Positions 1,572 to 60,522 of a stretch of DNA of 64,000 nt are shown in pieces. The notes under the pieces were generated by a model. It had not been told where the DNA came from and ran no database searches. It worked only from the letters and a program-made list of their open reading frames with translations. How positions within the stretch are numbered: position 1 is the first letter of the stretch; each line of letters starts with the position of its first letter. The translations under genes and the position numbers were made by a program. The stretch spans positions 124,001 through 188,000 of the IMG/VR virus record IMGVR_UViG_3300022744_000022. One strand, given 5' to 3'.

Positions 1572-2030
1572 ATGGCATCGACTCCCACGATTTCTACTTC
1601 ACAGAATGTTGAGCGTCACCGGACCTTGTTGGGCAAGGAGCCCACTGGGATTCAGGTCCGCCTGTACGAAAACTTCCCTACGTTCCGAGGCTTCTCGGAT
1701 AAGACCCTAAACCCCGAGGTCTTGGAGGCCGTGATCGTTTTGGGTCTGACCTTCGGTACGGCGCAGGATCGAGTCTTTGTGCTAGCCCCTGTAGCGCATG
1801 AGGACTGGGTGCTCGAAGAGTTCAACAAGGTCACGGACCTTGTGTTCAACGAGTGCAAGAAGCACCCGCACCGAGCCCGAGTCGCCAAAGCTTACGGCAC
1901 GCTGTTCAAGAAGATGGCCATCATGGGTCGGCTGTTGCAGTTCAAGGAGGAGCCTGTTCGTTGGGTTTCGTTCGGTTTCTCCGCAGAAGATCCGATCCCT
2001 GAGTGGATGCCGCAACGCTTGCTCAAGTAG
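1572..2030 (+). CDS. Hypothetical protein
   Basis: 152 aa ORF, motif-linked start, convergent overlap with next gene. Confidence 0.75.
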   Translation: MASTPTISTSQNVERHRTLLGKEPTGIQVRLYENFPTFRGFSDKTLNPEVLEAVIVLGLTFGTAQDRVFVLAPVAHEDWVLEEFNKVTDLVFNECKKHPHRARVAKAYGTLFKKMAIMGRLLQFKEEPVRWVSFGFSAEDPIPEWMPQRLLK

Positions 2031-2457
2031 GCTCGTCCTCTTTGGCCAAGTGATCAAACAACGTGACCGGCGGTTGAACTGCTGTTGGGACGGGGACCGG
2101 CGGTTGAACTGTCGGGACGGCTTCGGGAGCTGCAACGGGCGTCCTGGTAACTGTTACGGTTCTGGTTTGGAACAGACCCCCGTCCGTTCGCTGCCGACGG
2201 CTTGTTGGCCGCTCACCGAGGAAGCCGTCGAAAACGTCGTCCATCCTGGTGAACACCTCATCCATTCGGTCAAAAGCCTCCGAGGAGATGTCCCTTCGAT
2301 ACAGACGCCGGGGCTGCTCTAGGGGGCGTTCGACCCGAGGTTGAGGGTCAGGGACAGGCTCTTGTCGAGGGGCAGGTTTGGGTCGGGTCCAGAGGTAGAT
2401 CAGGAGCGCCCCCAAAAGGACGCCTGTAATCAACATGCCGATTCCGATCAGGATCAT
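2023..2457 (-). CDS. N-terminal TM protein with C-terminal TLFDHL-acidic tail
   Basis: Hydrophobic N-terminus; GGTGTA 9 nt upstream; 17-nt repeat at 2065/2095 encodes VQPPV twice. Confidence 0.8.
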   Translation of the reverse strand: MILIGIGMLITGVLLGALLIYLWTRPKPAPRQEPVPDPQPRVERPLEQPRRLYRRDISSEAFDRMDEVFTRMDDVFDGFLGERPTSRRQRTDGGLFQTRTVTVTRTPVAAPEAVPTVQPPVPVPTAVQPPVTLFDHLAKEDEPT

Positions 2458-2513
2458 CCTCTAGGGTACACCGGACGAAAGCTCTTGTGCGCTCTGTACC
2501 TGTAGGAGAGTAG

Positions 2514-3110
2514 ATGGCCGCCCTCATGCTTCAAGTCCCTGCCGAGACTGCTCGTGTTCTGCACGAGCTTCCGGTCCCGGGCAATCGAGAACGTCACGAC
2601 CCTCATGTGACGGTCATGTACCTGGGTAAGGATCTGCCGATCGAACGTATTGGCGAGATGCTGCCCGTAATCTACAACGTGACTTCCAAGACGCTACCCT
2701 TTTCAGTGTCCACGAGCCACGTCACCTGCTTCCCTGGGGGCGATGACGGGGTGCCGGTGATTGCACAGATTGACTCACCGGCGTTGCACCGCTTCCGAGA
2801 GAAACTGGTGCAGGCGTTCGAGGCTGCCGACCTTCCCTACGACAACAAGTTCCCCGAGTACAAGCCGCACACCACTCTCGCGTACGATCCTGATCTCGAT
2901 ACGGAAGTGGACCTCGACATCCCCGAAGTCTCATGGGGGGCCCACGAGCTGGTTCTCTGGGGCGCTGATCGGGGGACGGGCCGTCTAGTGGTCAAGTTCC
3001 CGCTGAGCCTACCTGCGGGGAAGGTAGCGAGCACCGGGTCCCACGATGCGCTGTATCGAGCAGCCGTACGACTCTCACTCTGGGGTCAACGCGATAGGCT
3101 CGTGGGCTGA
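2514..3110 (+). CDS. 2H phosphoesterase (2'-5' RNA ligase/ThpR-like)
   Basis: Two HxT motifs (PHVTV, PHTTL) with typical spacing; AGGAG RBS. Confidence 0.85.
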   Translation: MAALMLQVPAETARVLHELPVPGNRERHDPHVTVMYLGKDLPIERIGEMLPVIYNVTSKTLPFSVSTSHVTCFPGGDDGVPVIAQIDSPALHRFREKLVQAFEAADLPYDNKFPEYKPHTTLAYDPDLDTEVDLDIPEVSWGAHELVLWGADRGTGRLVVKFPLSLPAGKVASTGSHDALYRAAVRLSLWGQRDRLVG

Positions 3111-3323
3111 ACTCTTTGGGGCAGGCTCTTTTTTGAGCATAACTAGGCAATGCGTGCATTTGGGGATGTGCCGGTCGTGAGACGGGTGTCGCCAAACGAA
3201 GCCGTCAGCCCGTGGTTTGAGTCGGCCACATAGCGGCCCATTGCCCGCGTGGAAGATCCAATGGGCCACAGGTTTACGGGACCCTCGGTAGAACCAAGCC
3301 CCTATACTGCCGATTCCTTGCAC
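3075..3323 (-). CDS. Small Cys/His protein
   Basis: AHW...LCG...CTHC pattern; start uncertain (GTG 3323 or 3359). Confidence 0.5.
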   Translation of the reverse strand: MQGIGSIGAWFYRGSRKPVAHWIFHAGNGPLCGRLKPRADGFVWRHPSHDRHIPKCTHCLVMLKKEPAPKSSAHEPIALTPE

Positions 3324-3393
3324 ACCCTTGAATTCCCACAAGAAAAATCCACCTACCACAAAATCTCACGTTGTAGGTGAAGCGCTCTAGCCC

Positions 3394-4074
3394 CTATTCG
3401 TCATCTGCCATGAGCAGGTGATCGAACAACGTGAGGGGTTTGGGGCCGGTGATTGCAGTGAATGCCCCAGGCACCACGGTGATCTGAAAGGCCACAGCTT
3501 CTCGCAGGCTATCGATCTGGTGCGTCTGACTCTTGAGCCGGTAACCCTCAGGCACCGCTTGCTGTGCCACGGCGTTGAGATCTTGCCCCACGATCAACCT
3601 ACGGTCCCGGCTAGCGTGGACGCAGTACGTACCGCATCTGGGGCAGAGCCAAAATGTCGTATTCGAGGGGAGCACCTCATTCAGGACTTCGTTGGTCTCA
3701 ACCCCGGAGCAGGAAGCGGGGTTCCAGCAGAGCTTTCCCAGGAAGGAAGCGGCGGCCACTTTCTGGGTAAGCACTTGGGATTGCACGCCTCTTGGGGCAT
3801 GGTTCGGACACACAACCTCGGGTTCCGCCTGACGGGGACGCTCATATCGCAAGAAGGCATGGTCTGAGCAAAACCGTCTAGAGCACTCTTGCCAGCACTC
3901 AGGGGCGGCCCGCTTGAACTGCCACGTGGTGTACTGCCGGTTGAACCCGACGGCTGCCCGTACCCCCGTCAGACTCACGAACGTTACGGTAGTCCCGTCC
4001 ACCCAAGCCACGATCCCCTCGACTCCCGAATGAGTGTCGGTCCAGGTTTCTCCAACTTTAGGTAAGGGCAGCAT
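3394..4074 (-). CDS. Hypothetical Cys-rich (zinc-binding) protein with TLFDHL-acidic tail
   Basis: 226 aa, several CxxC-like pairs, ends PLTLFDHLLMADDE. Confidence 0.8.
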   Translation of the reverse strand: MLPLPKVGETWTDTHSGVEGIVAWVDGTTVTFVSLTGVRAAVGFNRQYTTWQFKRAAPECWQECSRRFCSDHAFLRYERPRQAEPEVVCPNHAPRGVQSQVLTQKVAAASFLGKLCWNPASCSGVETNEVLNEVLPSNTTFWLCPRCGTYCVHASRDRRLIVGQDLNAVAQQAVPEGYRLKSQTHQIDSLREAVAFQITVVPGAFTAITGPKPLTLFDHLLMADDE

Positions 4075-4091
4075 CTTCTTTTGTTGCGTTT

Positions 4092-4110
4092 GGTGTAGAA
4101 GGGCTACACC
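4092..4110. promoter_or_regulatory. Face-to-face pair of GGTGTAG elements between divergent genes
   Basis: GGTGTAG-AAGGG-CTACACC inverted repeat. Confidence 0.55.
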
Positions 4111-4123
4111 GAGTCCCGTAACG

Positions 4124-4558
4124 ATGCCTTCCCCGATTCCCCCGCAGGATGTTCAGCGAGCCCTCATGGCTCTCGGTGTGTCCCAGCAAGACTTTGATGC
4201 CATCCGACGGGTTCCGTTTCCGCAAGCTCAGACGCTACTGCAAGAGTTGAAGACGAAAGCTCGCCGCAACTACAAGCGACTGGCTCTTGAGCTGCACCCG
4301 GACCGGACACAAGGCGATGAAATCAAGGCTCAGTTGTTCGTGTTGCTCGGCCAAGTGCTGGGGGAACTCGACAAGACCACGGTGCATCCGCCTCCGCCGC
4401 CCCCACCTATGCCCTTCGTCAACTTCACCGCTGTGAATGTCTCGACATGGCAAGCATGGCAGGCACACGGCGTCCCTATGTCGTCAGCCACTACAGCCAG
4501 CACCGCTGGGTTTAGCCCAGCACAAGTGATCCGCATCGTGAGGATGCGGCCCCGATAA
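4124..4558 (+). CDS. J-domain (DnaJ-type) protein
   Basis: YKRLALELHPDR with HPD motif; start moved to ATG 4124. Confidence 0.8.
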   Translation: MPSPIPPQDVQRALMALGVSQQDFDAIRRVPFPQAQTLLQELKTKARRNYKRLALELHPDRTQGDEIKAQLFVLLGQVLGELDKTTVHPPPPPPPMPFVNFTAVNVSTWQAWQAHGVPMSSATTASTAGFSPAQVIRIVRMRPR

Positions 4559-17884: not shown

Positions 17885-18811
17885 ATGATGAAGACACGCC
17901 GAATCGATTCTCGGGACGAAAACGTTTCTAAGTACGTTTTCGATTTCGACTCAGCCGTAGCTGAGTCGGTGCTGTACAAGTACCCGACCTACGAAGCTCG
18001 TACGGTCATCTGCTGCTCCACGCAGAGCGGTTGCCCAGTGGGCTGCCGTTTCTGCGGGGCAGGAGATGCCTTCGTCCGCTCTCTGACAGCAGACGAAATC
18101 GTGGGACAGGTCCAGCACTTGTTTGCGGACCGCAACATCGACCCCACCAAGGTCGAACGCTGCCAGATCATGTTCATGAGCATGGGCGAGCCGCTCTTGA
18201 ATCTCGCGGGGCTCGCACCTGCAATTCGACGGCTGAACCAACTCTACCCTAAGGCTGCTCTGCTTATCAGCACCTCAGCCCCCAAGGTGGACTACGCTCA
18301 GGTGCGTGACCTCTCGGTAGAGGTTGACAAGGTGGGGCTCCAGTTCTCAGTGCATGAGAGTCTGGATGAGCGCCGTAACGCTCTTGTCCCGTTCAAGGCG
18401 AAGCTGACGCTTGCCGAGATTGCGGTTGAAGGTGAGGCCTGGTTCGAGGCCACGGGCCGTCAGCCCTTCTTCAACTACTGTGCGCATTCCGAGAACGTGT
18501 CGGATCAAGATGCCGACCGGCTCATGGCGCTCTACAAGCCGGGGATCTGGCAAGCCACGATCAGTGTTGTGTGTGAACGCGACGAATCGGTGGCGGCAGC
18601 CAACCAACGGCAACGAGAACTCGCTGCAAACTTCATGACGAAGTTGAGTGAACGAGGCTTCTCCACGCGGTGCTTTGACCCGGCGGGTCAAGACGATATC
18701 GGGGGCGGGTGCGGCCAACTTTGGTTCGTCCAAGATTGGATGCGCCGTCACCCCAAGCTTGCCAAACGCAGTGTGGGTCACGGCCTGCCTGTGATCCACA
18801 CCCCAACCTAA
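17885..18811 (+). CDS. RlmN/Cfr-family radical SAM RNA methyltransferase-like
   Basis: CSTQSGCPVGCRFC, MSMGEPLLN, DIGGGCGQL. Confidence 0.85.
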   Translation: MMKTRRIDSRDENVSKYVFDFDSAVAESVLYKYPTYEARTVICCSTQSGCPVGCRFCGAGDAFVRSLTADEIVGQVQHLFADRNIDPTKVERCQIMFMSMGEPLLNLAGLAPAIRRLNQLYPKAALLISTSAPKVDYAQVRDLSVEVDKVGLQFSVHESLDERRNALVPFKAKLTLAEIAVEGEAWFEATGRQPFFNYCAHSENVSDQDADRLMALYKPGIWQATISVVCERDESVAAANQRQRELAANFMTKLSERGFSTRCFDPAGQDDIGGGCGQLWFVQDWMRRHPKLAKRSVGHGLPVIHTPT

Positions 18812-18825
18812 CAACGGAGAACACC

Positions 18826-18963
18826 ATGGGCGGAGATACGTACCTCGACAAGATTGCAGAAGGCGAAGCAGCGCCGGAACCTCAAACCCCCGAACCCGAG
18901 CCCCAGCCGGTCGGGACGGCGGCACCCCTCGAAACCCCCGAGGCTGAGACCCCTCAGCCGTAA
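18826..18963 (+). CDS. 45-aa acidic Pro/Glu-rich peptide
   Basis: GGAG RBS, MGGDTY start. Confidence 0.55.
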   Translation: MGGDTYLDKIAEGEAAPEPQTPEPEPQPVGTAAPLETPEAETPQP

Positions 18964-18992
18964 GTCAACAACCAACCTGAAAGGCAACTACC

Positions 18993-19970
18993 ATGGGCGG
19001 CACAATGTGGAGCAGTGAGCTGTACGAAGATCGTGCAGCAACCAGAGCAAAGACGGGGACCCCGACGTTTGCTCATGACGCAGCAGTGCGTACGGGCCGA
19101 ACGGCCAAGAAGGCTCACGCCTCGCTTGAGCCGCACGGAGTCAAGGTGCGGGAGTCCAGGGACTCGGACGCACACCCGAATTCGTTGGCTATCGGCGTCG
19201 TCTTTGACGAGACGGGTTCGATGCACACGATTCCGGGCATCGTGCAGAAGAAGCTGACCAAGCTCATGGAGATCCTGCTCGACAAGAAATACTGCGAGGA
19301 CCCTCAGATCCTCGTGGGCGCTGTCGGTGATGCACGCTCGGACAGCGTGTCGTTGCAGATGGGGCAGTTTGAGTCGGGCATCGAGATCGATGAGCAGCTC
19401 GGGCACATCTACCTCGAAGCCAACGGTGGTGGCGGGGAACCCCAGGAAAGCTACCAGAACGCGCTGTACTTCTTCGCCAACAAGACCAGCATCGATTGCT
19501 GGGAGAAGCGGGGCAAGAAGGGCTTCCTGTTCATCATCGGAGACGAGAAGCCCTACGGGGCATCCACGCCGGAGGAGATCAACCGGATCTTCGGCGACGT
19601 GGTGCAAGAGAACGTGCTGACCACGGACTTGGTTCGCAAGGTCAAGGAGCGCTACCACGTCTTCTACCTGATGCCCAGCGGCACCATGCACTACAAGGAG
19701 CCGGGCATCGTCAACGCCTGGAACAGCCTTCTGGGTGCTGAGAACGTGATCATGCTCGATGACCCCAACCTCGTGGCTGAGACCATCGGGGCTACCGTGG
19801 GTATGGTTGAGAATGCGATCTCGCTCGATGCGATGACCACCGATCTCGGTGGCGGCAAGGATGCCCTGGTGGTCCGTGCAGCTCTGGATCGTCTCGCCCC
19901 GGCCGCTGCATCGGCCAAGGGTGGCGTCCCGGCGGCAACGACCAAGGGCGGCTCGAACGTTCGTCTGTGA
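18993..19970 (+). CDS. von Willebrand A (MIDAS) domain protein
   Basis: VVFDETGSM MIDAS; GGGGEPQESY; FIIGDE. Confidence 0.85.
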   Translation: MGGTMWSSELYEDRAATRAKTGTPTFAHDAAVRTGRTAKKAHASLEPHGVKVRESRDSDAHPNSLAIGVVFDETGSMHTIPGIVQKKLTKLMEILLDKKYCEDPQILVGAVGDARSDSVSLQMGQFESGIEIDEQLGHIYLEANGGGGEPQESYQNALYFFANKTSIDCWEKRGKKGFLFIIGDEKPYGASTPEEINRIFGDVVQENVLTTDLVRKVKERYHVFYLMPSGTMHYKEPGIVNAWNSLLGAENVIMLDDPNLVAETIGATVGMVENAISLDAMTTDLGGGKDALVVRAALDRLAPAAASAKGGVPAATTKGGSNVRL

Positions 19971-19975
19971 TCCCT

Positions 19976-20005
19976 AGGGGCCGGGGGCAAGCACCTCCGG
20001 CCCCT
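19976..20005 (+). terminator. GC-rich hairpin after the vWA gene
   Basis: GGGGCCGGGGG-CAAGCA-CCTCCGGCCCC, weak T tail. Confidence 0.45.
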
Positions 20006-20014
20006 TCAAACCCT

Positions 20015-20200
20015 ATGCCAAAACGCAAGTTCAAGAACCCGAAAGCTAAAGCCTGGGACGTTGCCGCTCATGGCCTAGCGGTGTGGCTGGGTGAACGTTG
20101 TTTGGCGAACGACGAAACGGTCCAGCACATCAAAGACCACATCCTCCCGTCCATGAGGCGACGGGCTGAGATCATCGAGAGGAACACCAAACATGGGTAA
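20015..20200 (+). CDS. Small basic protein
   Basis: Start ATG 20015; overlaps next start. Confidence 0.6.
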   Translation: MPKRKFKNPKAKAWDVAAHGLAVWLGERCLANDETVQHIKDHILPSMRRRAEIIERNTKHG

Positions 20201-21521
20201 CGCGATTCTTCTGGCTGGTCTTGGCTTCGGGGATGAGGGCAAGGGCTCCGTCATCGACCACCTTACGCACACCACCGGCGCTACCCTGGTCGTTCGCTAC
20301 AACGGCGGGGCACAAGCGGCCCACAACGTGATTACGAACCGAGGCTTCCACCACACGTTCGCTCAATTTGGATCCGGCACCTTCGCAGGGGCCAAGACTC
20401 ATCTGAGTCGGCACATGCTCGTGAACCCCAACAACCTCTTGAACGAGGCCAAGGCTCTTGAGGGGCTCGGGTTCGACCCCCTGGACCTGATCACTCTTGA
20501 ACGAGACGCCCTCGTCACGAACATGTTCCAGGTAACCGCGAACCGTCTTCGTGAGGCTCACCGTGGGAAAGGGCGTCACGGGTCCTGTGGCCTTGGAATC
20601 GGGGAAACGGTGGCGGATGCTCTCCAGCACCCGGATCAAGCGTTGCGTATCGGTGACCTCCAGGATCGCGAGCTGACCCGCAAGAAGCTCACGTTTTCCC
20701 GTGACCTAAAGTTCGCCGAGTTCGGTGGACGAGGACCTTCTGTAGATCACCCCTTCAGCGATCAGCGTCTTGAATTCTACCTAGACCTCTACGCGGACTT
20801 CGCCAAACGCTATCAAATCGTGGACCGGCAGTACCTTGAGCAGCAGCTCAAGCAAGAAGGCACCGTGATCTTCGAGGGGGCTCAGGGCGTCCTATTGGAT
20901 CAGGACTACGGATTCCACCCGTACACAACGTGGTCCGACACGACCTTCGGCAATGCCCACGACCTGCTCCAAGGGTTCGATGGGCCGGTACGTAAGATTG
21001 GCGTGCTCCGGGGCTACATGACCCGGCACGGTGCGGGACCTTTCCCGACCGAGCTACCTGACGACGTTCGATTGGACTGCGACATCCAAACGGACCTGCA
21101 CAACAAGTGGGGTGAATTTCAACGGCACTTCAGGGTCGGGCATTTCGATGCCGTGTTGGCCCGTTACGCCTTGGAAGTCATTGGGGGTGTGGACGAGTTG
21201 GCGATCACCAACCTCGATAAGCTCGGGGCAAAGCCGCAGATCTGCCCAAGCTACCGTGACGACTTCGGTCGCAAAGTTCACCGCATCGCGCCCAAGAAGC
21301 TCGATGACTTCATGTTGGAACAAGGTGCCCACCACTGGACGCGGATCTTACCCACCTTGAAGCCCAACTACGTGACGCTGCCTGATCGAGTCAGCATCGT
21401 AGACTGCATCGCCGAAGAACTTAGAACCTCTGTGACGCTGTGCTCAGTCGGACCCAAGACCCAGCATAAGTGGCCAACCCGTTACCTCCGAGACCTACAG
21501 GCGAGCCAATGGAACTCCTGA
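20193..21521 (+). CDS. Adenylosuccinate synthetase-like (divergent PurA family)
   Basis: GFGDEGKG, RYNGGAQAAH, FEGAQGVLLD, HPYTTWS. Confidence 0.88.
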   Translation: MGNAILLAGLGFGDEGKGSVIDHLTHTTGATLVVRYNGGAQAAHNVITNRGFHHTFAQFGSGTFAGAKTHLSRHMLVNPNNLLNEAKALEGLGFDPLDLITLERDALVTNMFQVTANRLREAHRGKGRHGSCGLGIGETVADALQHPDQALRIGDLQDRELTRKKLTFSRDLKFAEFGGRGPSVDHPFSDQRLEFYLDLYADFAKRYQIVDRQYLEQQLKQEGTVIFEGAQGVLLDQDYGFHPYTTWSDTTFGNAHDLLQGFDGPVRKIGVLRGYMTRHGAGPFPTELPDDVRLDCDIQTDLHNKWGEFQRHFRVGHFDAVLARYALEVIGGVDELAITNLDKLGAKPQICPSYRDDFGRKVHRIAPKKLDDFMLEQGAHHWTRILPTLKPNYVTLPDRVSIVDCIAEELRTSVTLCSVGPKTQHKWPTRYLRDLQASQWNS

Positions 21522-22705
21522 CCATCGCCACCAACATCAAGGCTGCCAAGTGCCCTGAGGACATCTTCGGTGGCCCTCCGGATGGCAGCACCGTTACGCC
21601 GGTCTACCGCCAGCTCATCCTCGTGATCCACCCTGATCACTTCGATGGAAAGCCCACAGAGCTGGCCACTGCCACGGAAGCATTCCGGCTCCTGGCTCAG
21701 CTCCGGGGTGAGGCCGAACGCAAGATCAAGGCGGGCAAGTACGGCCAGAAGAAGGTCAAGGCACCGCCACCCAAAGAGCCCTTCCGCCCCTCAGTGGTTG
21801 AGGCCAACGGCAAGCGCTACATCTTGACGGATCAGGTTGCCTCGGGGGACCTGTGCGACATCTTCCTGTGTACGATCTCCAACGGATCTGCCGACCACAA
21901 AGCCATTTTTAAGATCGTCAAGAACGGGGCTGACAACGATCTCGTTGAAAACGAGATCAAGGTACTTGCGAAGCTCCACGCGCCTGGGGTCAAGTTCGAC
22001 GAACGCTTTTTCCCGAAAACGAACGACTCGTTCGTCATCCGGGGACCCGGGTTTCAACGTCAAGTCAACGTCCTGTCGTGGTTTCCAGAGCACCGAGGAC
22101 TTGACGAGGTGCTGAGAGTCTTCCCGGACGGCATCGACTACCGTGACATGGTGTGGATGTTCAAACGCATCCTGCACGGCGTAGGGTTCGCCCACGAGAA
22201 CCAGATCGTACACGGGGCCCTGATCCCGCCTCACATCCTGATCCACCCGGTGGACCACGGGGCCAAAATCATCGATTGGTCGTATGCGGTGGACATTACG
22301 CCTAAAGTCAAGGCGGTCAAACCCAAGACTCACCGCAGCCTTTACGACCTCTTGGACGCGGACGACATCCTTACTCCAGACCCGCACGTCAAGGCAATCA
22401 GCGCCGACTACAAGTTGTATTACCCGCCGGAGATCCTTAAGAAAGAGATCCCGACGCCCGCCAGCGACATTTACATGGCAGCCAAGTGTGCGGTAGCCTT
22501 GGTGGGTGGTGACTTGAAAACGAACGCAATGCCCAACGAGATCCCTGGAACTGTCCGGGCCTTCTTTGAGCGTTGCCTTCATGCGGTTCCGGCCAAGCGT
22601 CCGCAGAACATGTGGGACGCCCATGAGGAGCTGGACCGAATCTTGAAAGCAGCCGTGGGCAAACGAACTTACCGACCCTTCCCCATGCCTGAGGTACGCC
22701 CGTGA
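21509..22705 (+). CDS. J-domain-like N-terminus fused to Ser/Thr kinase-like domain
   Basis: YRQLILVIHPD; IFKI...NE; IVHGAL..HILI...IIDWSYA...YYPPE. Confidence 0.8.
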   Translation: MELLTIATNIKAAKCPEDIFGGPPDGSTVTPVYRQLILVIHPDHFDGKPTELATATEAFRLLAQLRGEAERKIKAGKYGQKKVKAPPPKEPFRPSVVEANGKRYILTDQVASGDLCDIFLCTISNGSADHKAIFKIVKNGADNDLVENEIKVLAKLHAPGVKFDERFFPKTNDSFVIRGPGFQRQVNVLSWFPEHRGLDEVLRVFPDGIDYRDMVWMFKRILHGVGFAHENQIVHGALIPPHILIHPVDHGAKIIDWSYAVDITPKVKAVKPKTHRSLYDLLDADDILTPDPHVKAISADYKLYYPPEILKKEIPTPASDIYMAAKCAVALVGGDLKTNAMPNEIPGTVRAFFERCLHAVPAKRPQNMWDAHEELDRILKAAVGKRTYRPFPMPEVRP

Positions 22706-23904
22706 TGATCCGTTATGAAGACCGCCTCGCACAGCTCCGAGAGCTGCCCGTACGGATCTACTGTGCGGCAGCCGGGGCAGGAGCTGGGATTCAACAGATC
22801 CTCTGGAACCCCGTCGGAGCATCGGCCTATCTGGCTGGGGCTGCCTTCCCGTACTCCAAGGAGTTGTCCACAGACTTCTTGGGTTTCCAGCCCCCGAGCT
22901 TTGTGTGCCTTGATGAAGCCATCGACCTCGCGATCTCGTCCTATCTCAAGGCCGACAACGGGGATCCGACCAAGCAGCCCATCGGCCTAGGTTTGACCGC
23001 TGCGGTCGCCACGGCAGTGCAGCACCGTGGGGATCACCGAGTTCACGCGGTCGTGATCACGAGGGATCGTGTGCTTGCCTCGGAGATGACGCTCCCCAAA
23101 GAGGGTCCGCACGTTCGTAACCGAGACGGCAGCATCGCGGACACGCTCGGGATCGAATTGATTTTGGCGGCAGCCAACCTGATCCCCGAGCCCGTCCGAG
23201 AGGCATACTTGGAAGCCACCGACGGACAGTGCCTCAAAGACATCACGCAGAGGGCCCGCCAGCACTTCCTGAGCCGACCGCTGTTTACCCGGTACGGTCA
23301 ACGCCTTGAGGCACCTGCGGGGAACCTGACGCTGTTCCCGGGCAACTTCGACCCGCCTCACGAGGGGCACTTCGCCAACGCGGGCGAAGAAGTGACGTTC
23401 CAGATCACCGCGAGCCCGCCGCACAAGCCGGGTTTGAGCCTCACGGACATGTTGGGCCGCGTTCGCCACTTCCGGCACAAGCGGGACGTGCTGTTCATGG
23501 AAGGCGGGGCACTCTACCTGGAGAAGGCCCGGAGGTTCCCTGGTTCGACTATCATCCTGGGGAGCGATGCCCTCGAACGGATGCTTGATCCCAAGTGGGG
23601 CGTGGAAGTGCTGCCGTTGCTGACCGAGTTCCGCGAGCTGGGGACCAGGTTCAGGGTTGCGACACGTGAGGGGGACGAGTTCGCACGGCTCCCGATCCCA
23701 GGGACCTTCCGAGACATGTTCACTGAGCTGCCCAAAACCCCGTACGCGGGCTTGAGTTCGACGCAGATCAGAGAGGGCGTATTGGCCCCCACCTCTCACG
23801 CGCCCCCCGGCACGGGCCAAGTGTGTGGTGCCGCTAATGATTGCACCCGGTTCAAAGGACACACAGGGCAGCACGCCAATCTCTACAACCAGCGTGTTTG
23901 GTAA
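22702..23904 (+). CDS. CinA/PncC-like domain fused to NMN/NaMN adenylyltransferase-like domain
   Basis: GASAYLAGAAFPYS CinA-C pattern; PGNFDPPHEGH (HxGH) and LSSTQIR. Confidence 0.75.
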   Translation: MMIRYEDRLAQLRELPVRIYCAAAGAGAGIQQILWNPVGASAYLAGAAFPYSKELSTDFLGFQPPSFVCLDEAIDLAISSYLKADNGDPTKQPIGLGLTAAVATAVQHRGDHRVHAVVITRDRVLASEMTLPKEGPHVRNRDGSIADTLGIELILAAANLIPEPVREAYLEATDGQCLKDITQRARQHFLSRPLFTRYGQRLEAPAGNLTLFPGNFDPPHEGHFANAGEEVTFQITASPPHKPGLSLTDMLGRVRHFRHKRDVLFMEGGALYLEKARRFPGSTIILGSDALERMLDPKWGVEVLPLLTEFRELGTRFRVATREGDEFARLPIPGTFRDMFTELPKTPYAGLSSTQIREGVLAPTSHAPPGTGQVCGAANDCTRFKGHTGQHANLYNQRVW

Positions 23905-24531
23905 TCACAAGTCGTCTTCGTCCTCTAGAGCAGCCCACAAGCCGCCGCCGCTGCCCCGGAGTTGGTTCTGCATCACACGTTGAAGTGGTGTGACGGCTTT
24001 GAACATGGCCTCCCGTCCAGAGTCATCGGGGACGGTCAGCGTAAAGAGCATCACGGAGTGCGTTTCATCGAGTAGCGTCAGAAGCCGGGTGCCTTCTTTG
24101 GGGCCAGGATCGAAGATGAAGTGGAGCCGCCAAACCCCACCGCCCGCACCCTGCTGGTTCTGGAACCCAGTCACCACGTGGTAGGGCTCGTCCGAGAGGG
24201 GCTCTGCTTGATACTGCGTCCCAATGGCTCGCAACCGAACGGCGAGATCCGACGAGTTTGCCAGCCCGAGGTTCCGCTCTCTAGTTTCTTGTATCACCTG
24301 CTCGGGGGTCTTCTTCACGGGGACGTGCAGGATCGTCTCCATGTATTCGTGGACACCCTGCGTCACTTTCGCTTTTGGGGTGGCCGTGTAGCTGATCGTC
24401 CGATTCCGTGGGTGCTCTTGGTGTAGTAACCCATTAGCCTTGCCCTGGACCCCCATGGTCCGGATCACGATCACCGTCGGACATTCCTCAGGGTTCAACC
24501 GAATCGGCCTACGTGTGACATCGATGAGCAC
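23905..24531 (-). CDS. Hypothetical protein ending LWAALEDEDDL
   Basis: GGTGTA 9 nt before GTG 24531. Confidence 0.75.
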   Translation of the reverse strand: MLIDVTRRPIRLNPEECPTVIVIRTMGVQGKANGLLHQEHPRNRTISYTATPKAKVTQGVHEYMETILHVPVKKTPEQVIQETRERNLGLANSSDLAVRLRAIGTQYQAEPLSDEPYHVVTGFQNQQGAGGGVWRLHFIFDPGPKEGTRLLTLLDETHSVMLFTLTVPDDSGREAMFKAVTPLQRVMQNQLRGSGGGLWAALEDEDDL

Positions 24532-28600: not shown

Positions 28601-29029
28601 GTGGCCCGGACCAGACAACGATTCACGAGCAAGGTGACGGTTAGGACAACGCTGCCGTTAGGTCGTAGTGAAACGCTCGGTTCGGTGCAGAACAAGCAAA
28701 TCCGGCGTCCCGATGCCCCCGGGTACATCACGGGGATGCTGGGTAAGTGGTTCCTCGTGTTGCATGAGGGGGAAACGACCCCCGCTATCTACAACCCAGA
28801 GGAACTCAGGCTTGAGCCGCACGCCTACTGGCGGGTCACCCACACCCTGGCAGGACAGCCCTACTTCAAGGAATTCGGAACCTACCGCGAGGTCGAGAAG
28901 CATTTGAAAGCGCTGGGCAAGTTGGGCGGTGTAGCCCTTGGTATCGAAGGCCCTTTCTACTCCGCAAAGGAGTTGGAAGAGGGGCCTGTCCCCACCCGAA
29001 ATCTTTTTGATCATTTGAACGACGCATGA
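28601..29029 (+). CDS. Hypothetical protein ending RNLFDHLNDA
   Basis: Coupled to next gene by ATGA; start uncertain. Confidence 0.7.
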   Translation: MARTRQRFTSKVTVRTTLPLGRSETLGSVQNKQIRRPDAPGYITGMLGKWFLVLHEGETTPAIYNPEELRLEPHAYWRVTHTLAGQPYFKEFGTYREVEKHLKALGKLGGVALGIEGPFYSAKELEEGPVPTRNLFDHLNDA

Positions 29030-39050: not shown

Positions 39051-39076
39051 TACACCGGGGCTTGGGAAAACTCTAG
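39051..39076 (-). promoter_or_regulatory. CTAGAGTT-N12-GGTGTA promoter
   Basis: 8 nt before ATG 39042. Confidence 0.7.
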
Positions 39077-39381: not shown

Positions 39382-39403
39382 AGTTTCTCTGCTCTCCGGT
39401 GTA
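39378..39403 (+). promoter_or_regulatory. CTAGAGTT-N12-GGTGTA promoter
   Basis: 8 nt before ATG 39412. Confidence 0.7.
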
Positions 39404-43182: not shown

Positions 43183-43734
43183 ATGGGCCACCCCGCAGGT
43201 AGCTTCTGTTCCCTTTGTCTCAAATCTGAGTCAGAGGTCCCCCGCTTGATTGTGAGCGGCACGATGGCAGCGGTTTGCACCGAGTGCATTCAGCTCTGCA
43301 ACGAGATTTTGGAGGGGGACGACGAGCCTTTCACAGAGGAACCCCCGCCCCGCTACGTGGGTGGCGAGAGACCCCCTGTGCTCCCCGATACGCTCTCGAT
43401 CGAGCTGTTCTACCACGCCACCGAGGTGATGCTGAACACGTTGGTGCTCTCGGGAGAACCCCAGCCCTATAGTACGGTGGCCCCCATCGTGGGCTACCAC
43501 CACCGGGACCGGAACTTCTATCGCATGCTCGGGCGGTCCCTACGTGAGGACCACGCCGCTGGACGCCCCCTCAGGGCCTCCATGGTCATCAACAAGGCTC
43601 TGGGGATGCCTGGGCAGGCCTACTTCATGGTCTGCCGTGAGCTGGGCCTGGAAGTCCCCAAGGGCGGTGAAGCGGCCTTCTGGACTGCCCAGCTCGACCG
43701 CCTCGCCCTAGAGTTTTCCGAAGTCCAAGTGTAG
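43183..43734 (+). CDS. ClpX C4-type zinc-binding domain fused to an unknown domain
   Basis: FCSLCLKSESEVPRLIVSG...VCTECIQLCNEIL. Confidence 0.8.
   Translation: MGHPAGSFCSLCLKSESEVPRLIVSGTMAAVCTECIQLCNEILEGDDEPFTEEPPPRYVGGERPPVLPDTLSIELFYHATEVMLNTLVLSGEPQPYSTVAPIVGYHHRDRNFYRMLGRSLREDHAAGRPLRASMVINKALGMPGQAYFMVCRELGLEVPKGGEAAFWTAQLDRLALEFSEVQV
43708..43733 (+). promoter_or_regulatory. CTAGAGTT-N12-AGTGTA promoter embedded in a CDS end
   Basis: 9 nt before ATG 43743. Confidence 0.6.
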
Positions 43735-45129: not shown

Positions 45130-45155
45130 CTAGAGTTTAGCCTCTCTCCGGTGTA
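45130..45155 (+). promoter_or_regulatory. CTAGAGTT-N12-GGTGTA promoter overlapping a hairpin (45118-45151)
   Basis: 9 nt before ATG 45165. Confidence 0.7.
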
Positions 45156-46979: not shown

Positions 46980-47467
46980 CCACTGACACCAAACCTCGGA
47001 TCAACACCATCCACAATCTCGGGCCCATCGACCCCGTGGAGCCCGGACACACGTACGAGTTCCTGTTTGGCATGAGCACACGAGCCGGTCACGTACACGA
47101 GCGGGGCTCGCTCCTGCACGTCGAAGACCGCACCACCCGAACCCCGCATGGGGAGATCAGTGAATCCGGAAGCAACTGGGTGTGCCGAACCCAGCACGGC
47201 ACGTCCGTGTGGGCTACTCTTGAGCAGTGCCTGTCCCGGGGCATGCTCAAACGCCTGAGGGACTACACGGTTTACTTCTGGAACGGGGAGCTGGGGGCAG
47301 ACCCCAAGGACCGTCGGGGACGCCCTCTCGTACACAACACCGTCATGGGCTTCACAGCCGACGACCTCGAAAATCTGACGGGCCACTACGACGTGATGAT
47401 CACGACGAGCACTTGCCCGCCCGTCCTATACCTCAACAAGGTCGGTGGGAAATTCGGCCAGCGCTAG
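46976..47467 (+). CDS. Hypothetical protein
   Basis: 163 aa. Confidence 0.75.
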   Translation: MTTDTKPRINTIHNLGPIDPVEPGHTYEFLFGMSTRAGHVHERGSLLHVEDRTTRTPHGEISESGSNWVCRTQHGTSVWATLEQCLSRGMLKRLRDYTVYFWNGELGADPKDRRGRPLVHNTVMGFTADDLENLTGHYDVMITTSTCPPVLYLNKVGGKFGQR

Positions 47468-47946
47468 TCGTCTGCCAGATGATCCCAAAGGGTCACTGGC
47501 TTAGCAGCGGTCTCCGGCGTAGGGGTGTCTCGCCTGTAGAGACGACGCTGATACAGGGGTTGCAGATCAGGCTCAACCCGTTCCCCAAACCGGGTGAGCG
47601 CTTCGATCATCCCACGTGAGATCCTGGCATCCGAACGTATACGGATCCTGACCCTGGAGGGGTGGACTTCCACACCGTGAAATCCGATCTCGGCGGCGAG
47701 CGCTTGGATCGTTTGAACGAGGTGCCGATCCAGATCCCGTTCACCGGCCACGTGATCCTCGACCTCAAGCCACCCTTCACGATCTCGGGAGCGTGCAGGG
47801 TTCACGATGAGCCGACGCAGGTAGCTTAGCGCCAAGACCGTGGAACGCCCTGTACGGCGGTAGTCCTCGGTCCCATCATGGAGCCAGTCCAAGGCTTCCA
47901 GAGCCCTGCGTTGAGGCGGCGTGAGCGAGAAGACGGGTGGGGGCAC
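47464..47946 (-). CDS. Hypothetical protein ending PVTLWDHLADD
   Basis: GGTGTA 9 nt before GTG. Confidence 0.75.
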   Translation of the reverse strand: MPPPVFSLTPPQRRALEALDWLHDGTEDYRRTGRSTVLALSYLRRLIVNPARSRDREGWLEVEDHVAGERDLDRHLVQTIQALAAEIGFHGVEVHPSRVRIRIRSDARISRGMIEALTRFGERVEPDLQPLYQRRLYRRDTPTPETAAKPVTLWDHLADD

Positions 47947-52300: not shown

Positions 52301-52527
52301 TCGGGATTGCTTCTATCGGGAACCCTCAGTGGAGGTCCCCGATGGTGAACCTGTTCAACTTCAACCCCGCTCAACCCGCGACCCCGCCATCTGCGCCCCA
52401 ACCCGCAGCCCCTGGGGACACGCCCCCACTCATGGCTCAGGACGAGAACGGGAAGTGGAAGTTCCACCGTAACCCTGTGAGCGCTTTGTTCTGGGATCGC
52501 CTCCCCGCCTCTTTGAAACACGAGTGA
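52297..52527 (+). CDS. Small Pro-rich protein
   Basis: GGAGG precedes internal ATG (MVNLF); ends LFWDRLPASLKHE. Confidence 0.6.
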   Translation: MIGIASIGNPQWRSPMVNLFNFNPAQPATPPSAPQPAAPGDTPPLMAQDENGKWKFHRNPVSALFWDRLPASLKHE

Positions 52528-57591: not shown

Positions 57592-57617
57592 CTAGAAGTT
57601 TTCTGCCAGTTGGTGTA
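57592..57617 (+). promoter_or_regulatory. CTAGAAGT-N12-GGTGTA promoter, back-to-back with a minus-strand copy at 57581-57586
   Basis: Divergent intergenic region of 62 nt. Confidence 0.6.
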
Positions 57618-57631
57618 ATGTTTATTCAGCC

Positions 57632-58408: not shown

Positions 58409-58733
58409 GCACTGGCGTCGTATTGGACGCAACCTGATCTTCCGCGTGATCCTTGATCGACGGGACTTCGCGTGGGAGTCCCGCATGACTGTCCGGGGCT
58501 GGCTCCGCACGTGGGCGGCCCCGGACATCACGCTCTTGGGCTGGCCCGGGAAACGGTTCTGGCACGCCCACCTACGGTACCGGCTTCTCTACGGTGATGC
58601 AGATTGGCAGCACCACCGAGAGTACGCTCAGAAGCGTCACGCCGAGTGGGTTCAGAAGGCCAAGCCTCTGGAGCTACGGCGCAACGGCCTGGGATCGCTC
58701 TACGTGCATGCCCCTCAAGACGACGCCCGCTAA
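58395..58733 (+). CDS. Hypothetical Trp/Arg-rich protein
   Basis: Start GTG 58395 or ATG 58485. Confidence 0.5.
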   Translation: MADSRHWRRIGRNLIFRVILDRRDFAWESRMTVRGWLRTWAAPDITLLGWPGKRFWHAHLRYRLLYGDADWQHHREYAQKRHAEWVQKAKPLELRRNGLGSLYVHAPQDDAR

Positions 58734-58918
58734 CCGTTCGTGAAGCGCTTCCAGAGTGTCTGGGGCTGTACGCCGACCGCTTCGGCGTCGTTTGGTCCTG
58801 GGGTTGGGATCAAACGCCCGTGCTCGATGGCGAGGTAGACCACCTTACCGCTGGGATCCAGGGTGCAGAGGCGATCTTCCTCATCGACGTACAGGTTCAA
58901 CACTCGTAGCTCGGGCAT
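58730..58918 (-). CDS. Small hypothetical protein
   Basis: 62 aa. Confidence 0.6.
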   Translation of the reverse strand: MPELRVLNLYVDEEDRLCTLDPSGKVVYLAIEHGRLIPTPGPNDAEAVGVQPQTLWKRFTNG

Positions 58919-59522
58919 GCTCTTGCGCTACACCATCGGCCATGGCCTGCGCTTGGAAGAAAGCCCGCTTCTTAGCACAAGAGGTGCCTTCCAAGGGACA
59001 TGTAGGTCCCGTTCGCTTAGCCCAATTACAATTTGCGCACAAAGTCTGAAAGCCTGGGGGAAATTTCTGCGCCACCAACCAAGAAAAAATCTGCGTGACT
59101 TTCTTACGGTGCTCTCTACCCCCACCGGCTACATGATCAATTTGCAGTAACCTCTCTTCTGGCTCTCCACAACAAGCACAAGCCTTCCCGTAATGTGCAA
59201 AGCATGCTAAACGGTCACGTTCGTAACGAGCTGTGGCCCAACGTCGAGCAGCAAATCGGTGATCCGCGTAATACCTGTTGTTGTAGTCAAAACACCTAGG
59301 GCATTTCCGATACCCCTCTTTGACTGGACGCCCGCACTCGCAAATCCCGCGATCCCGTAGTTTCTTCTTGCGGTTAGCCCGGTATTCATTCTGGACCAGA
59401 TTACAAGGGTCACAATGATTCTTGGATACGCCCGGCTGAAATGGCTGGCGGCACTTCATACAGAGCCCCGCCTCTTTGAAGCGTTTTCTACGTGCCTTCT
59501 CTGCTTCAGATGCGGCTGACAT
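58881..59522 (-). CDS. HNH endonuclease with N-terminal zinc fingers (homing-type)
   Basis: CACCGE...LQIDH..GGG...FQTLCANCN; more A/T-rich than its neighbours. Confidence 0.85.
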
Positions 59523-60063
59523 TCTCCTGAAGCATCTTTATAAATAGTTCCCCCTGTTCCTGTGCATCGGACAGGGCGACATGGGTATGGGGGTTCTTGG
59601 AAAACCAACGCTTGGGCATGTTCCGCTTAGTAGCCTTTCGGAAGTCGCTCTTGAGCATGCACATGGCGAACGTCTTGATGTCTAGGCCGGAGAACGAGAA
59701 GGGGCTCTCGCCCGCGAACCTGATCAAGTACCAGTACACGAACATGAAGTCGTACGTGGCGGGGTACCCGACGAACACAGGCTTGCCAGGAAGGCCCTTG
59801 AGCCACTCTAGGTAGCCCTTCATGGCATCCACGGGGGTCACAAGGCCTTGACGGCACGCTGCCCAAGCCTCGGGCTGCCCCGCCCACCATTCGGCGGTTT
59901 TGGGGTCTGCGGAGGCCCCTGGTAGCGTTTCTAGATTCCGCGTGAAGGTGTCGAGCAACGTGCCCTCTGACGAGAAGGCAGCGGATCCGAAGCTCAGCAT
60001 CGAGTTGGGGCCGGGGATTGGGCCGTCGGATTTAATGTCTGTGGAGACGTAGATTTCTTGCAT
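59506..60063 (-). CDS. DEDDh 3'-5' exoribonuclease-like protein; first motif reads DIK
   Basis: [27 protein letters not shown]. Confidence 0.85.
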
Positions 60064-60072
60064 CCTGGCCGC

Positions 60073-60089
60073 TACACCAAGCCGGTGTA
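60073..60089. promoter_or_regulatory. Back-to-back GGTGTA pair between divergent genes
   Basis: TACACC-AAGCC-GGTGTA; 9 and 10 nt from the two starts. Confidence 0.7.
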
Positions 60090-60099
60090 CTCTGCCCGG

Positions 60100-60522
60100 G
60101 TGCTCATCAACCTACTCGGCCCGATCATCCTTGCACCGTACGCGGATCGGGATGAACTCAGCTTCTTGACCAAGGACACGCGCCCTAAGGGCCTCGTGAC
60201 TGTGATCCACGACGGCCTTGTGTACAAACAGCAAGGGGGCGAGCGGCAGGTCTTGGTTGAGGCGTACTGGCAAGTCCAAGAAGGTGTGATCCGAACCGCA
60301 ATCCCGCTCAACCAAGCCTGTGGGCATAAGTTCTACTGTGGACACGTCTGGACCTCAGAACACGGCGAGTTCAACGTCAACAACCGCATCGTCTCAGTGT
60401 GCCTCAATGACGACATCTTGATCGTTACCCCTACGGGCGGGCAACCGCTGATGCTTGACCTTGGGCTAAAGATGGAAATCACGCAGGAAAAGCGAACCCT
60501 CTGGGATCTCTTGGCTGACTAG
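60100..60522 (+). CDS. Hypothetical protein ending [10 protein letters not shown]
   Basis: Start moved to GTG 60100. Confidence 0.7.

What the first reader, a model, noticed from the sequence alone, without database searches (positions are those of the whole stretch)
2023..60522. Shared C-terminal (T/S/N)L(F/W)D(H/L)L-acidic tail on unrelated proteins
Non-homologous proteins end with the same short motif: 2023(-) PVTLFDHLAKEDEPT; 3394(-) PLTLFDHLLMADDE; 28601 TRNLFDHLNDA; 47464(-) PVTLWDHLADD; 60100 [10 protein letters not shown]; variant 23905(-) GLWAALEDEDDL. Weaker cases are 52297 (LFWDRL) and 61704 (TLFDKLDK). Each clear case follows a Pro/Gly/Lys linker, and all six genes have GGTGTA upstream. 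The codons differ, so this is protein-level conservation, not a DNA repeat. It suggests a genome-wide docking, localisation or degradation tag read by one hub (protease, chaperone, clamp or compartment). I know of no description of such a system.
Basis: partly seen in the sequence, partly recalled or inferred. Interest (0 to 1): 0.82.

Follow-up and report, generated by a model that had tools for sequence, protein, structure and literature searches.

The report
Shared docking tail on huge-phage proteins
Unrelated proteins of an uncultured huge phage, and of its distant relatives, end in the same short acidic helix on a floppy linker, which looks like an address tag read by one partner protein that I could not identify.

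Summary
In my 99-gene call of the window, L[FW]D[HLK]L occurs six times, and every copy lies within the last 12 residues of a protein. Shuffling predicts 0.007 such C-terminal hits. The codons differ, so this is protein-level conservation.

The window is part of a 208-kb huge-phage contig. The tail survives in orthologues that share only 33-39% identity and sit in a 38%-GC lineage. The linker in front of it varies freely in length and sequence. The same tail class ends the phage-type RNase HII in at least 58 of 102 long-tailed homologues. A related acidic motif opens the family-A DNA polymerase across the clade.

The tail therefore behaves as a tethered short linear motif: an N-capped amphipathic mini-helix with an acidic flank. 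The closest sequence look-alikes are the T4 and RB69 sliding-clamp-binding tails (SLDFLYEDDN, SLFDMFDF). I found no clamp gene in the 174 kb that I read.

Other candidate receptors:
- a phage ClpX and a second protein with a ClpX-type zinc finger;
- a conserved cassette of an AAA ATPase followed by an HK97-fold protein;
- a kinase fused to a J domain.

The receptor is unresolved. GGTGTA is a genome-wide, leaderless-type promoter-like element and is not specific to these genes.

The parts
2023..2457 (-). 144-aa protein with an N-terminal membrane anchor, a long Pro-rich linker, the core TLFDHL (2047-2064) and the acidic end AKEDEPT
   Evidence: No Pfam or PHROGs hit. GGTGTA lies 15 nt upstream of the start.
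3394..4074 (-). Cys-rich protein of up to 226 aa, possibly a zinc ribbon, with the core TLFDHL (3415-3432) and the end LMADDE
   Evidence: No family hit. The only IMG/VR match is its own contig.
23905..24531 (-). 208-aa protein with the variant tail GLWAALEDEDDL (core 23926-23943)
   Evidence: The orthologue in the 38%-GC lineage ends GFWGAVLEDDFELF at 37% identity.
28601..29029 (+). Small protein of 114-142 aa (start uncertain) with the core NLFDHL (29000-29017) and the end NDA
   Evidence: Orthologues end TIFDHLMEENSF and TIFDHLTEDDII.
47464..47946 (-). 160-aa protein with a folded core, a linker of about 30 aa, the core TLWDHL (47476-47493) and the end ADD
   Evidence: Orthologue alignment A1. 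The AlphaFold2 model has residues 122-160 below pLDDT 50 and a helix at 153-158.
60058..60522 (+). 140-aa protein, probable start at 60100, with the core TLWDLL (60496-60513) and the end AD
   Evidence: The orthologue ends NLWDIVRRDNL. GGTGTA lies 16 nt upstream of 60100.
61704..62768 (+). 354-aa protein with two membrane helices and a coiled coil, the core TLFDKL (62742-62759) and the end DK. It is the second gene of a run of same-strand genes that continues with an OmpA-domain protein and an ABC ATPase.
   Evidence: Its TAG stop is in frame with the next ORF at 62793.
52342..52527 (+). Weak case: 61-aa ORF ending ALFWDRLPASLKHE
   Evidence: It does not fit the core pattern, and I found no orthologue evidence.
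58730..58918 (-). Weak case: 62-aa ORF ending QTLWKRFTNG, with a basic rather than acidic flank
   Evidence: GGTGTA lies 16 nt upstream.
21509..22705 (+). Ser/Thr kinase with an N-terminal J-domain-like HPD segment and an internal, conserved motif-like insert RSLYDLLDADD (22337-22354). It is a candidate reader or pseudo-ligand.
   Evidence: It is 62% identical to the kinase of the 38%-GC lineage, and the insert is conserved there.
43183..43734 (+). 183-aa protein with a ClpX-type C4 zinc finger at its N-terminus. It is a candidate reader or competitor, together with the phage ClpX outside the window.
2467..2472 (-). One example of the GGTGTA element that lies 13-18 nt upstream of 17 start codons in the window. 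It looks like a leaderless-type promoter.

Best explanation
Layer 1, about 0.85, mostly shown. The tail is a tethered short linear docking motif. A helix N-cap residue (T, S, N or D) is followed by hydrophobic, F/W, D/E/A, any residue, hydrophobic. Two to twelve mostly acidic residues follow. The whole sits at the end of a Pro-rich disordered linker. It folds into about one and a half turns of amphipathic helix, which should insert into a hydrophobic and basic groove of one shared receptor. Soluble orphan proteins, a Cys-rich protein, two membrane-anchored proteins and RNase HII are thereby brought to the same place.

The motif is the same in phage lineages of 38% and 59% GC. The receptor should therefore be phage-encoded and conserved in the clade, or be a universally conserved host protein.

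Layer 2, my commitment, about 0.3, inferred. The receptor is a component of the phage replisome and is used the way T4 uses its sliding clamp gp45. Enzymes and regulators that must act at replicating DNA each carry the tail. The membrane-anchored carriers tether that assembly to the membrane. The two clade-wide carriers are replication enzymes: RNase HII at its C-terminus and the family-A DNA polymerase at its N-terminus.
For: Shown.
- Position-specific enrichment.
- Different codons.
- The tail is retained in four of four orthologue pairs at 33-39% identity and across a GC shift from 59% to 38%.
- The linker length varies from about 10 to 40 aa within one family.
- AlphaFold2 gives a low-confidence linker and a helix exactly on LWDHLA.
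- RNase HII homologues mostly carry a linker and then a tail. At least 58 of the 102 tails of 14 aa or more fit [DE]-hydrophobic-[FW/LM]-x-x-L-acidic. The mean charge of the last 12 residues is -3.2.
- At least 72 of 120 polymerase homologues open with an acidic run followed by hydrophobic-x-x-F-L-x-x-hydrophobic.
- More distant relatives carry TLWDKLGDDL and SLYDHVMDDDDE.

Look-alikes read from the records themselves: T4 gp43 SLDFLFG, T4 gp55 SLDFLYEAND, RB69 gp43 SLFDMFDF, RB69 gp55 SLDFLYEDDN.

From established knowledge, not tested here: archaeal and eukaryotic RNase H2 bind PCNA through a C-terminal peptide.
Against: - Pfam and PHROGs recognise no clamp and no clamp loader in the 174 kb read (contig 22.5-196.8 kb). 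None appears among the conserved families of 54 relatives' replication modules either.
- The replicase is a family-A polymerase, and such polymerases normally work without a clamp.
- The polymerase motif has F-L rather than L-F and sits at the other terminus, so equating it with the tail is an inference.
- Most carriers are orphans with no link to DNA.
- No binding test was possible, because no multimer modelling tool was available.
Confidence: 0.35

Rival explanations
1. The tail is a tag for proteostasis. [quoted passage not shown] The carriers are then unfolded, remodelled or degraded on schedule.
For: - The phage encodes a full ClpX with a GYVG pore loop and an LGF ClpP-docking loop.
- It also encodes a second ClpX-type zinc-finger protein, a Ycf46-like AAA ATPase and three J-domain proteins.
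- Every copy of the motif is close to a C-terminus.
- The layout of domain, flexible linker and terminal peptide is that of SspB and its ClpX-binding tail (PMC7226468).
Against: - The core lies a variable 2-12 residues from the end, and the end is acidic. To my knowledge, C-terminal Asp-Asp blocks E. coli ClpXP.
- The E. coli zinc-binding domain prefers the basic motif LKxh (PMC7226468).
- The phage ClpX is an ordinary ClpX, about 45% identical to those of other large phages such as phage G, Atu_ph07 and the Lak phages. I did not look for this motif in those phages.
- A clade-wide tail on RNase HII fits recruitment better than disposal.
Confidence: 0.2
2. The tail is a cargo-loading (targeting) peptide for an HK97-fold shell. 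The shell would be either the phage capsid, which packages internal or ejected proteins, or a separate encapsulin-like compartment built by the conserved cassette of AAA ATPase followed by HK97-fold protein.
For: - The 388-aa orphan next to the AAA ATPase, outside the window, models at pLDDT 88.7. Its best PDB matches are encapsulins and HK97-type capsids, and its best viral matches are major capsid proteins.
- The AAA gene and the HK97-fold gene are adjacent and co-oriented in 19 of the 25 loci that hold both.
- Encapsulin cargo is addressed by short C-terminal peptides, and sometimes N-terminal ones, on unrelated proteins (PMC8346489). That matches C-terminal tails plus an N-terminal polymerase motif.
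Against: - The protein may simply be the phage's major capsid protein. About 34 kb of the contig was not read.
- Nothing links it to the tails.
- Two carriers have membrane anchors, and a DNA polymerase or RNase HII would be unusual cargo.
- The motif is unlike TVGSL-type targeting peptides.
- Carrier genes are scattered rather than next to the shell gene.
Confidence: 0.15
3. The tail binds a universally conserved host hub, above all the beta sliding clamp. It would hijack or block the host machinery.
For: - The same motif in phages of very different GC content fits a receptor that is conserved in all bacteria.
- Ligands of the beta clamp have acidic flanks and often sit at C-termini (PMC11139829).
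- Many RNase HII tails, such as LFDLL, LLDLL and IMELL, fit positions 2-5 of the clamp-binding motif.
Against: - The main motif has H, K or R where the clamp-binding motif requires Leu or Met. That review calls this position 4 a key contact.
- The motif also lacks the leading Gln (PMC11139829).
Confidence: 0.08
4. The tail is a docking site for the J-domain kinase, which carries a pseudo-ligand copy of the motif inside its own kinase domain.
For: - The kinase is conserved at 62% identity in the 38%-GC lineage, and its internal RSLYDLLDADD is conserved there too.
- T-x-x-D resembles acidophilic kinase sites. This last point is from memory only.
Against: - The first position can be N or D, which cannot be phosphorylated.
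- The internal segment may simply be part of the kinase fold.
- There is no evidence of binding.
Confidence: 0.05
5. The pattern is a chance or compositional artefact, or comes from recent duplication of one 3' gene end.
For: The regular expression was chosen after the tails had been seen.
Against: - Six C-terminal hits stand against 0.007 expected.
- The codons differ.
- The tail is conserved in orthologues from a lineage of different GC content.
- An independent family, RNase HII, carries at least 58 tails of the same class.
Confidence: 0.01

Closest known systems
C-terminal tails that bind the T4-family sliding clamp gp45 (on gp43 polymerase and gp55 late sigma; also gp33, from memory)
   Same: A short hydrophobic and acidic peptide sits at the extreme C-terminus of non-homologous proteins, after Ser/Pro/Lys-rich residues. 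The sequences are close: RB69 gp43 SLFDMFDF and T4/RB69 gp55 SLDFLYE(A/D)(N/D)(D/N) compare with TLFDHLADD-type tails here and with SIFDLMEGLE and PDLFDLLAEVD on RNase HII. Replication enzymes are among the carriers.
   Different: No gp45-like clamp or gp44/62-like loader was found in the 174 kb read. The polymerase is family A and carries its motif at the N-terminus. The final aromatic residue is replaced by Leu. Membrane proteins are among the carriers. The share of genes carrying the tail is much larger, about 9 in 100 in the window.
SspB-type adaptor tail that docks on the zinc-binding domain of ClpX
   Same: The architecture of folded domain, long flexible linker and terminal docking peptide is the same. 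The phage encodes a ClpX and an additional ClpX-type zinc-finger protein.
   Different: The known ClpX-binding motifs are basic and hydrophobic (LKxh; PMC7226468), whereas this one is acidic. Here many proteins carry the tail, not one adaptor.
Encapsulin targeting (cargo-loading) peptides
   Same: Unrelated proteins are addressed by one short terminal peptide behind a flexible linker. N-terminal versions exist as well (PMC8346489). An HK97-fold protein that matches no known sequence family is conserved in the clade.
   Different: The consensus is different. Cargo genes are not next to the shell gene. Some carriers are membrane proteins. The shell protein may just be the capsid protein.
Clamp-binding motif of the bacterial beta clamp, Q-aliphatic-x-[L/M]-[F/L]
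   Same: It is a terminal or loop short linear motif with acidic flanks, read by one hub (PMC11139829).
   Different: The leading Gln is absent, and position 4 is polar or basic in the main motif.
Acidic C-terminal tails of T7 gp2.5 and gp4, which bind the T7 family-A polymerase
   Same: They are acidic tails with an aromatic residue on unrelated replisome proteins of a phage with a family-A polymerase. The ends DEDGDF and NDTDF were read.
   Different: In T7 the aromatic residue is the very last one and there is no amphipathic helix core. There are two carriers only.

Membership tests
T4-type gp45 clamp-binding tails | A short peptide at the extreme C-terminus of unrelated proteins | tested here: met
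   Six of six core hits lie within 12 residues of the end. The carriers match no Pfam or PHROGs family.
T4-type gp45 clamp-binding tails | Consensus S-L-(D-F or F-D)-(L/M)-(F/Y) | tested here: inconclusive
   [TS]-L-[FW]-D-x-L matches RB69 gp43 at four of six positions. The last aromatic residue is Leu, and position 5 is H, K or R.
T4-type gp45 clamp-binding tails | The genome encodes a gp45-like clamp and a gp44/62-like loader | tested here: not met
   Pfam and PHROGs recognise none in contig 22.5-196.8 kb, nor in the conserved families of 54 relatives' replication modules. About 34 kb was not read, and a divergent clamp could escape these searches.
T4-type gp45 clamp-binding tails | The replicative polymerase carries the tail at its C-terminus | tested here: not met
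   The family-A polymerase ends ...KLRKHNLLCAE. It has an acidic motif at its N-terminus instead.
Beta-clamp binding motif | Q-aliphatic-x-[L/M]-[F/L] or the six-residue form | tested here: not met
   There is no Gln, and position 4 is H, K, R or L (PMC11139829).
ClpX recognition (C-terminal degron or zinc-binding-domain docking tail) | A non-polar LAA-like end, or a basic docking motif (LRVVK, LKxh) | tested here: not met
   The ends are acidic (ADD, DDE, EDEPT) and the core is not basic (PMC7226468).
ClpX recognition (C-terminal degron or zinc-binding-domain docking tail) | A ClpX is available in the system | tested here: met
   A phage ClpX of 424 aa has the zinc finger, the AAA_2 domain, a GYVG loop and an LGF loop. 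A second zinc-finger protein lies at window 43183-43734.
Encapsulin cargo-loading peptides | An HK97-fold shell protein is encoded | tested here: inconclusive
   The fold is present at pLDDT 88.7, with Foldseek probability 1.0 to encapsulins and capsids. It may simply be the major capsid protein.
Encapsulin cargo-loading peptides | Cargo genes lie beside the shell gene and carry a TVGSL-like consensus | tested here: not met
   The carriers lie 14-116 kb from that gene, and the motif is different (PMC8346489).
Encapsulin cargo-loading peptides | Physical encapsulation of tagged proteins | not testable with these tools
   This needs expression and particle analysis.

The most novel reading that the evidence does not exclude
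The conserved cassette of AAA ATPase followed by HK97-fold protein builds a phage-encoded shell that is separate from the virion capsid. The acidic mini-helix would be its cargo-loading peptide, and the shell would concentrate RNase HII, the polymerase and a set of orphan proteins. That would be an encapsulin-like compartment made by a virus during infection.
Probability: 0.08. Interest if true: 0.92.

Novelty: new variant of a known kind. Interest (0 to 1): 0.66.

Why it matters
Phage short linear motifs with a clade-wide reach are rarely mapped. This one marks about a dozen proteins of one huge phage, most of them with no known function. It also marks the RNase HII, and probably the polymerase, of a clade of huge phages found in many environmental metagenomes (54 IMG/VR contigs of 5 to 529 kb).

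Finding the receptor would give all those orphans a common context in one step. It would show how these phages organise replication, protein turnover or a compartment. It would also provide a small portable tag for recruiting proteins in infected cells.

The question is directly testable with a 12-residue peptide.

Tried and rejected
- A megablast of 25 kb against cultured phages found nothing. tblastn of a relative's RNase HII (P0018) against the same collection found nothing at E 1e-30. There is therefore no cultured, annotated relative to lean on.
- Recoding of TAG. An amber-suppressor tRNA is present, but the standard code gives the best gene model.
- I scanned IMG/VR with the promoter pattern CTAGAGTTT-N11-GGTGTA in order to jump around the contig. 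It returned only sites near the window and one close relative; the rest looked like chance hits.
- I used an alignment of the tails as a query to fetch every tail-coding locus. In the second, 48 stretches matched the pattern but only the query's own locus passed the tblastn filter.
- The metagenome scan with the kinase returned only four loci.
- Candidate clamps. Ten orphans of 226-265 aa have no informative PHROGs hit. The 388-aa and 210-aa replication-module proteins and three family profiles have no relative among PDB sequences. The 388-aa protein turned out to have an HK97 fold, not a clamp fold.
- The Ycf46-like AAA ATPase showed no recognisable peptide-binding N-domain.
- The ESM Atlas and a PDB profile search for the 47464 family gave only weak leads, to terminase-like proteins and to RpoD at E = 0.013. 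I did not rely on them.
- One look-up failed on a wrong start codon.
- Literature searches for a phage ClpX degron or for phage encapsulin-like targeting found nothing relevant.
- I left out a fold search of the 47464 model because its pLDDT is only 58.7.

Full report
WHAT THE WINDOW IS. The window is bases 124001-188000 of IMG/VR contig IMGVR_UViG_3300022744_000022 (the same record as JGI Ga0228700_1000016), which is 208,486 bp long. Another assembly holds a 291-kb version. The window has 59% GC, genes on both strands, and no close relative among cultured phages. It carries auxiliary genes:
- an NAD-salvage set (NAMPT, Nudix/NrtR, a cytidylyltransferase-like protein);
- an adenylosuccinate-synthetase-like gene;
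- a Ser/Thr kinase;
- an RNA-repair set (RtcB, RNA ligase, PTH2, a CCA/poly(A) polymerase);
- a zeta-toxin-like protein.
The standard genetic code fits best, although an amber-suppressor tRNA sits at 10711-10783.

All quoted C-termini are there. In my 99-gene set the core L[FW]D[HLK]L occurs six times, always within the last 12 residues. Residue shuffles give 0.08 hits anywhere and 0.007 near a C-terminus. The codons differ between copies. Pro is enriched in the 25 residues before the motif, 16% against 6%.

The protein from 61704-62768 is a full member. The ORFs at 52342-52527 and 58730-58918 remain weak.

GGTGTA is over-represented, with 51 sites against 16 expected. It sits at a fixed 13-18 nt before 17 start codons, which leaves 9-10 nt between the hexamer and the ATG or GTG. 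Some copies have CTAGAGTTT 11 nt further upstream. This looks like a promoter for leaderless or nearly leaderless transcripts used all over the region. Motif genes are enriched for it (5 of 9 against 12 of 91, p = 0.007), which suggests a shared expression class. It is not a private signal of these genes.

BEYOND THE WINDOW. I walked along the contig and read 22.5-196.8 kb.

More carriers appeared:
- a 166-aa protein ending PPPTSLWDKLNDS;
- a 169-aa protein ending PPPVSLLDRLLDEGDDE;
- RNase HII, ending KPRDAAPQDLFALFEAIDS;
- a 90-aa ORF with a perfect TLWDHLKEDEP followed by 25 extra residues.

The replication module at 59-94 kb holds no copy. That module comprises an SNF2 helicase, DnaB with an intein, a primase zinc ribbon, a family-A polymerase, an AAA ATPase, ThyX and ClpX. 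The block of large tail-like proteins at 22-59 kb holds none either. So "genome-wide" is too strong. The tails belong to the accessory part of the genome.

IT IS UNDER SELECTION.
- The 47464 family has orthologues at 51-60% identity that keep TLWDHL[K/E/A]DD, while the linker ranges from about 10 to 40 residues. More distant members read TLWEYLKDED.
- A lineage with only 38% GC (contig Ga0209777_10003227) keeps the tail in the orthologues of 60100 (NLWDIVRRDNL), 28685 (TIFDHLMEENSF), 23905 (GFWGAVLEDDFELF) and 47464, at 33-39% overall identity.
- A syntenic 283.5-kb genome deposited at NCBI (GCA_902725915.1) has SLYDHVMDDDDE on the orthologue of the 169-aa protein.
- Relatives at about 52-54% polymerase identity have TLWDKLGDDL on another family.

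AlphaFold2 on the 47464 family gives a moderately confident core. Residues 122-160 are below pLDDT 50, and a helix falls exactly on LWDHLA. The residue before the helix is always T, S, N or D, which are the classic helix N-cap residues (general knowledge). With the Asp three positions later it forms a capping-box pattern.

TWO CLADE-WIDE CARRIERS.
- RNase HII. Of the 120 best homologues, most lie on metagenomic contigs of up to 512 kb. Of these, 102 have 14 or more residues after the catalytic domain. At least 58 of the 102 fit [D/E]-[L/I/V/A]-[F/W/L/M]-x-x-[L/M]-acidic under a strict filter. Examples are PDLFDLLAEVD, SIFDLMEGLE, NVWDLLGNETE and RAWEHLEDES. The mean charge of the last 12 residues is -3.2.
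- The polymerase. At least 72 of 120 homologues begin with an acidic run and then hydrophobic-x-[D/A]-F-L-x-x-hydrophobic, followed by a Pro/Ala-rich linker. Examples are DDDDDLSAFLALAM, IDDFLATL and LEDFLSLL. In this phage it is the only protein with such an N-terminus. Whether this is the same motif read in the same pocket is an inference.

WHO READS IT. Not settled. No tool here could model or test a complex.

(a) A sliding clamp. T4 and RB69 tails, read directly from the records, are the closest sequence match. RNase H-type enzymes and polymerases are classical clamp clients. But I found no clamp or loader in the 174 kb read, nor among the conserved families of 54 relatives' replication modules. 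The polymerase is family A. The host beta-clamp motif is not met at its key fourth position (PMC11139829).

(b) Proteostasis machines. The phage has a complete ClpX, a second ClpX-type zinc-finger protein in the window, a Ycf46-like AAA ATPase and three J-domain proteins. Against this, the tail end is acidic and variably spaced, and the E. coli zinc-binding domain prefers basic motifs (PMC7226468).

(c) An HK97-fold shell. The 388-aa orphan just after the AAA ATPase models at pLDDT 88.7 and matches encapsulins and phage capsid proteins. None of its 25 members hits Pfam or PHROGs. AAA gene followed by HK97-fold gene is a fixed pair in 19 of 25 loci. Encapsulins load cargo through short terminal peptides (PMC8346489). 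But the protein may simply be the capsid protein, and membrane-anchored carriers fit poorly.

(d) The J-domain kinase, which carries a conserved internal RSLYDLLDADD.

MY RANKING OF THE RECEPTOR.
- Replisome-type hub: about 0.3.
- ClpX, zinc-finger protein or AAA ATPase: 0.2.
- HK97-fold shell: 0.15.
- Host beta clamp: 0.08.
- Kinase: 0.05.
- Something not considered: the remainder.

VERDICT. The tail is a real, selected, tethered docking motif shared by unrelated proteins of a huge-phage clade. The principle is known from the T4 clamp tails, the SspB tail and encapsulin targeting peptides. This motif, its breadth and its unknown receptor are new. It overstated "genome-wide" and the specificity of GGTGTA.

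Noticed in passing
window 10711-10783 (+): A tRNA with anticodon CUA, an amber suppressor that ARAGORN labels Pyl. The standard code still gives the best gene model. Five of the nine motif genes in the window end in TAG, against 26 of 99 genes overall.
   Followed up: partly
window 62766-62795: The TAG stop of the 61704-62768 gene is in frame with the next ORF, which starts at 62793 and encodes a 611-aa OmpA-domain protein. Eight codons separate them. Read-through would fuse the two proteins and bury the tail.
   Followed up: no
window, 51 sites, e.g. 39398-39403 (+), 45150-45155 (+), 39051-39056 (-): GGTGTA, often GGTGTAGTA, lies 9-10 nt before start codons. A subset has CTAGAGTTT 11 nt upstream. 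This looks like a phage promoter for leaderless transcripts.
   Followed up: partly
window 21509-22705 (+): A Ser/Thr kinase with a J-domain-like HPD segment at its N-terminus. Two further J-domain proteins lie at L080:5505-6632 and L080:671-1768(-).
   Followed up: partly
L072:7402-8676 (contig about 86.3-87.6 kb) and window 43183-43734: The phage encodes a full-length ClpX with a GYVG loop and an LGF loop but no RKH loop. It also encodes a separate 183-aa protein that carries only the ClpX-type zinc finger plus an unknown domain.
   Followed up: partly
L080:18279-20989 (contig about 77.4-80.2 kb): A Ycf46-like AAA ATPase is followed by a 388-aa protein with an HK97 (capsid or encapsulin) fold that matches no known sequence family. 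The pair is conserved next to the polymerase in many relatives.
   Followed up: yes
L080:16808-17440 and its family (alignment A9): The 210-aa protein after the polymerase has a Cys-rich N-domain, a Pro-rich linker and its own conserved basic C-terminal peptide, VVKPGAKVKLGG. This is a second, different tail motif.
   Followed up: no
window 2023-2457 (-) and 47464-47946 (-): Both proteins contain the heptapeptide RRLYRRD upstream of the tail.
   Followed up: no
L080:10001-12772: The DnaB-type helicase is interrupted by an intein with a LAGLIDADG endonuclease. Several relatives have inteins in the polymerase as well.
   Followed up: no
window 15244-23904: A cluster for NAD and nucleotide metabolism: Nudix/NrtR-like protein, NAMPT, a radical-SAM-like protein, an adenylosuccinate-synthetase-like protein and a cytidylyltransferase-like protein.
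   Followed up: no
window 61024-64000 and L066:11090-15681: A run of same-strand genes: a 227-aa protein, the tail-bearing membrane and coiled-coil protein, an OmpA-domain protein, a 259-aa protein, an ABC ATPase and a DUF4419 protein. It may form an envelope-spanning complex.
   Followed up: no
L066:16560-16832 (-): A 90-aa ORF with a perfect TLWDHLKEDEP that is not terminal. Twenty-five more residues follow and overlap the next gene, which may reflect a lost stop codon.
   Followed up: no
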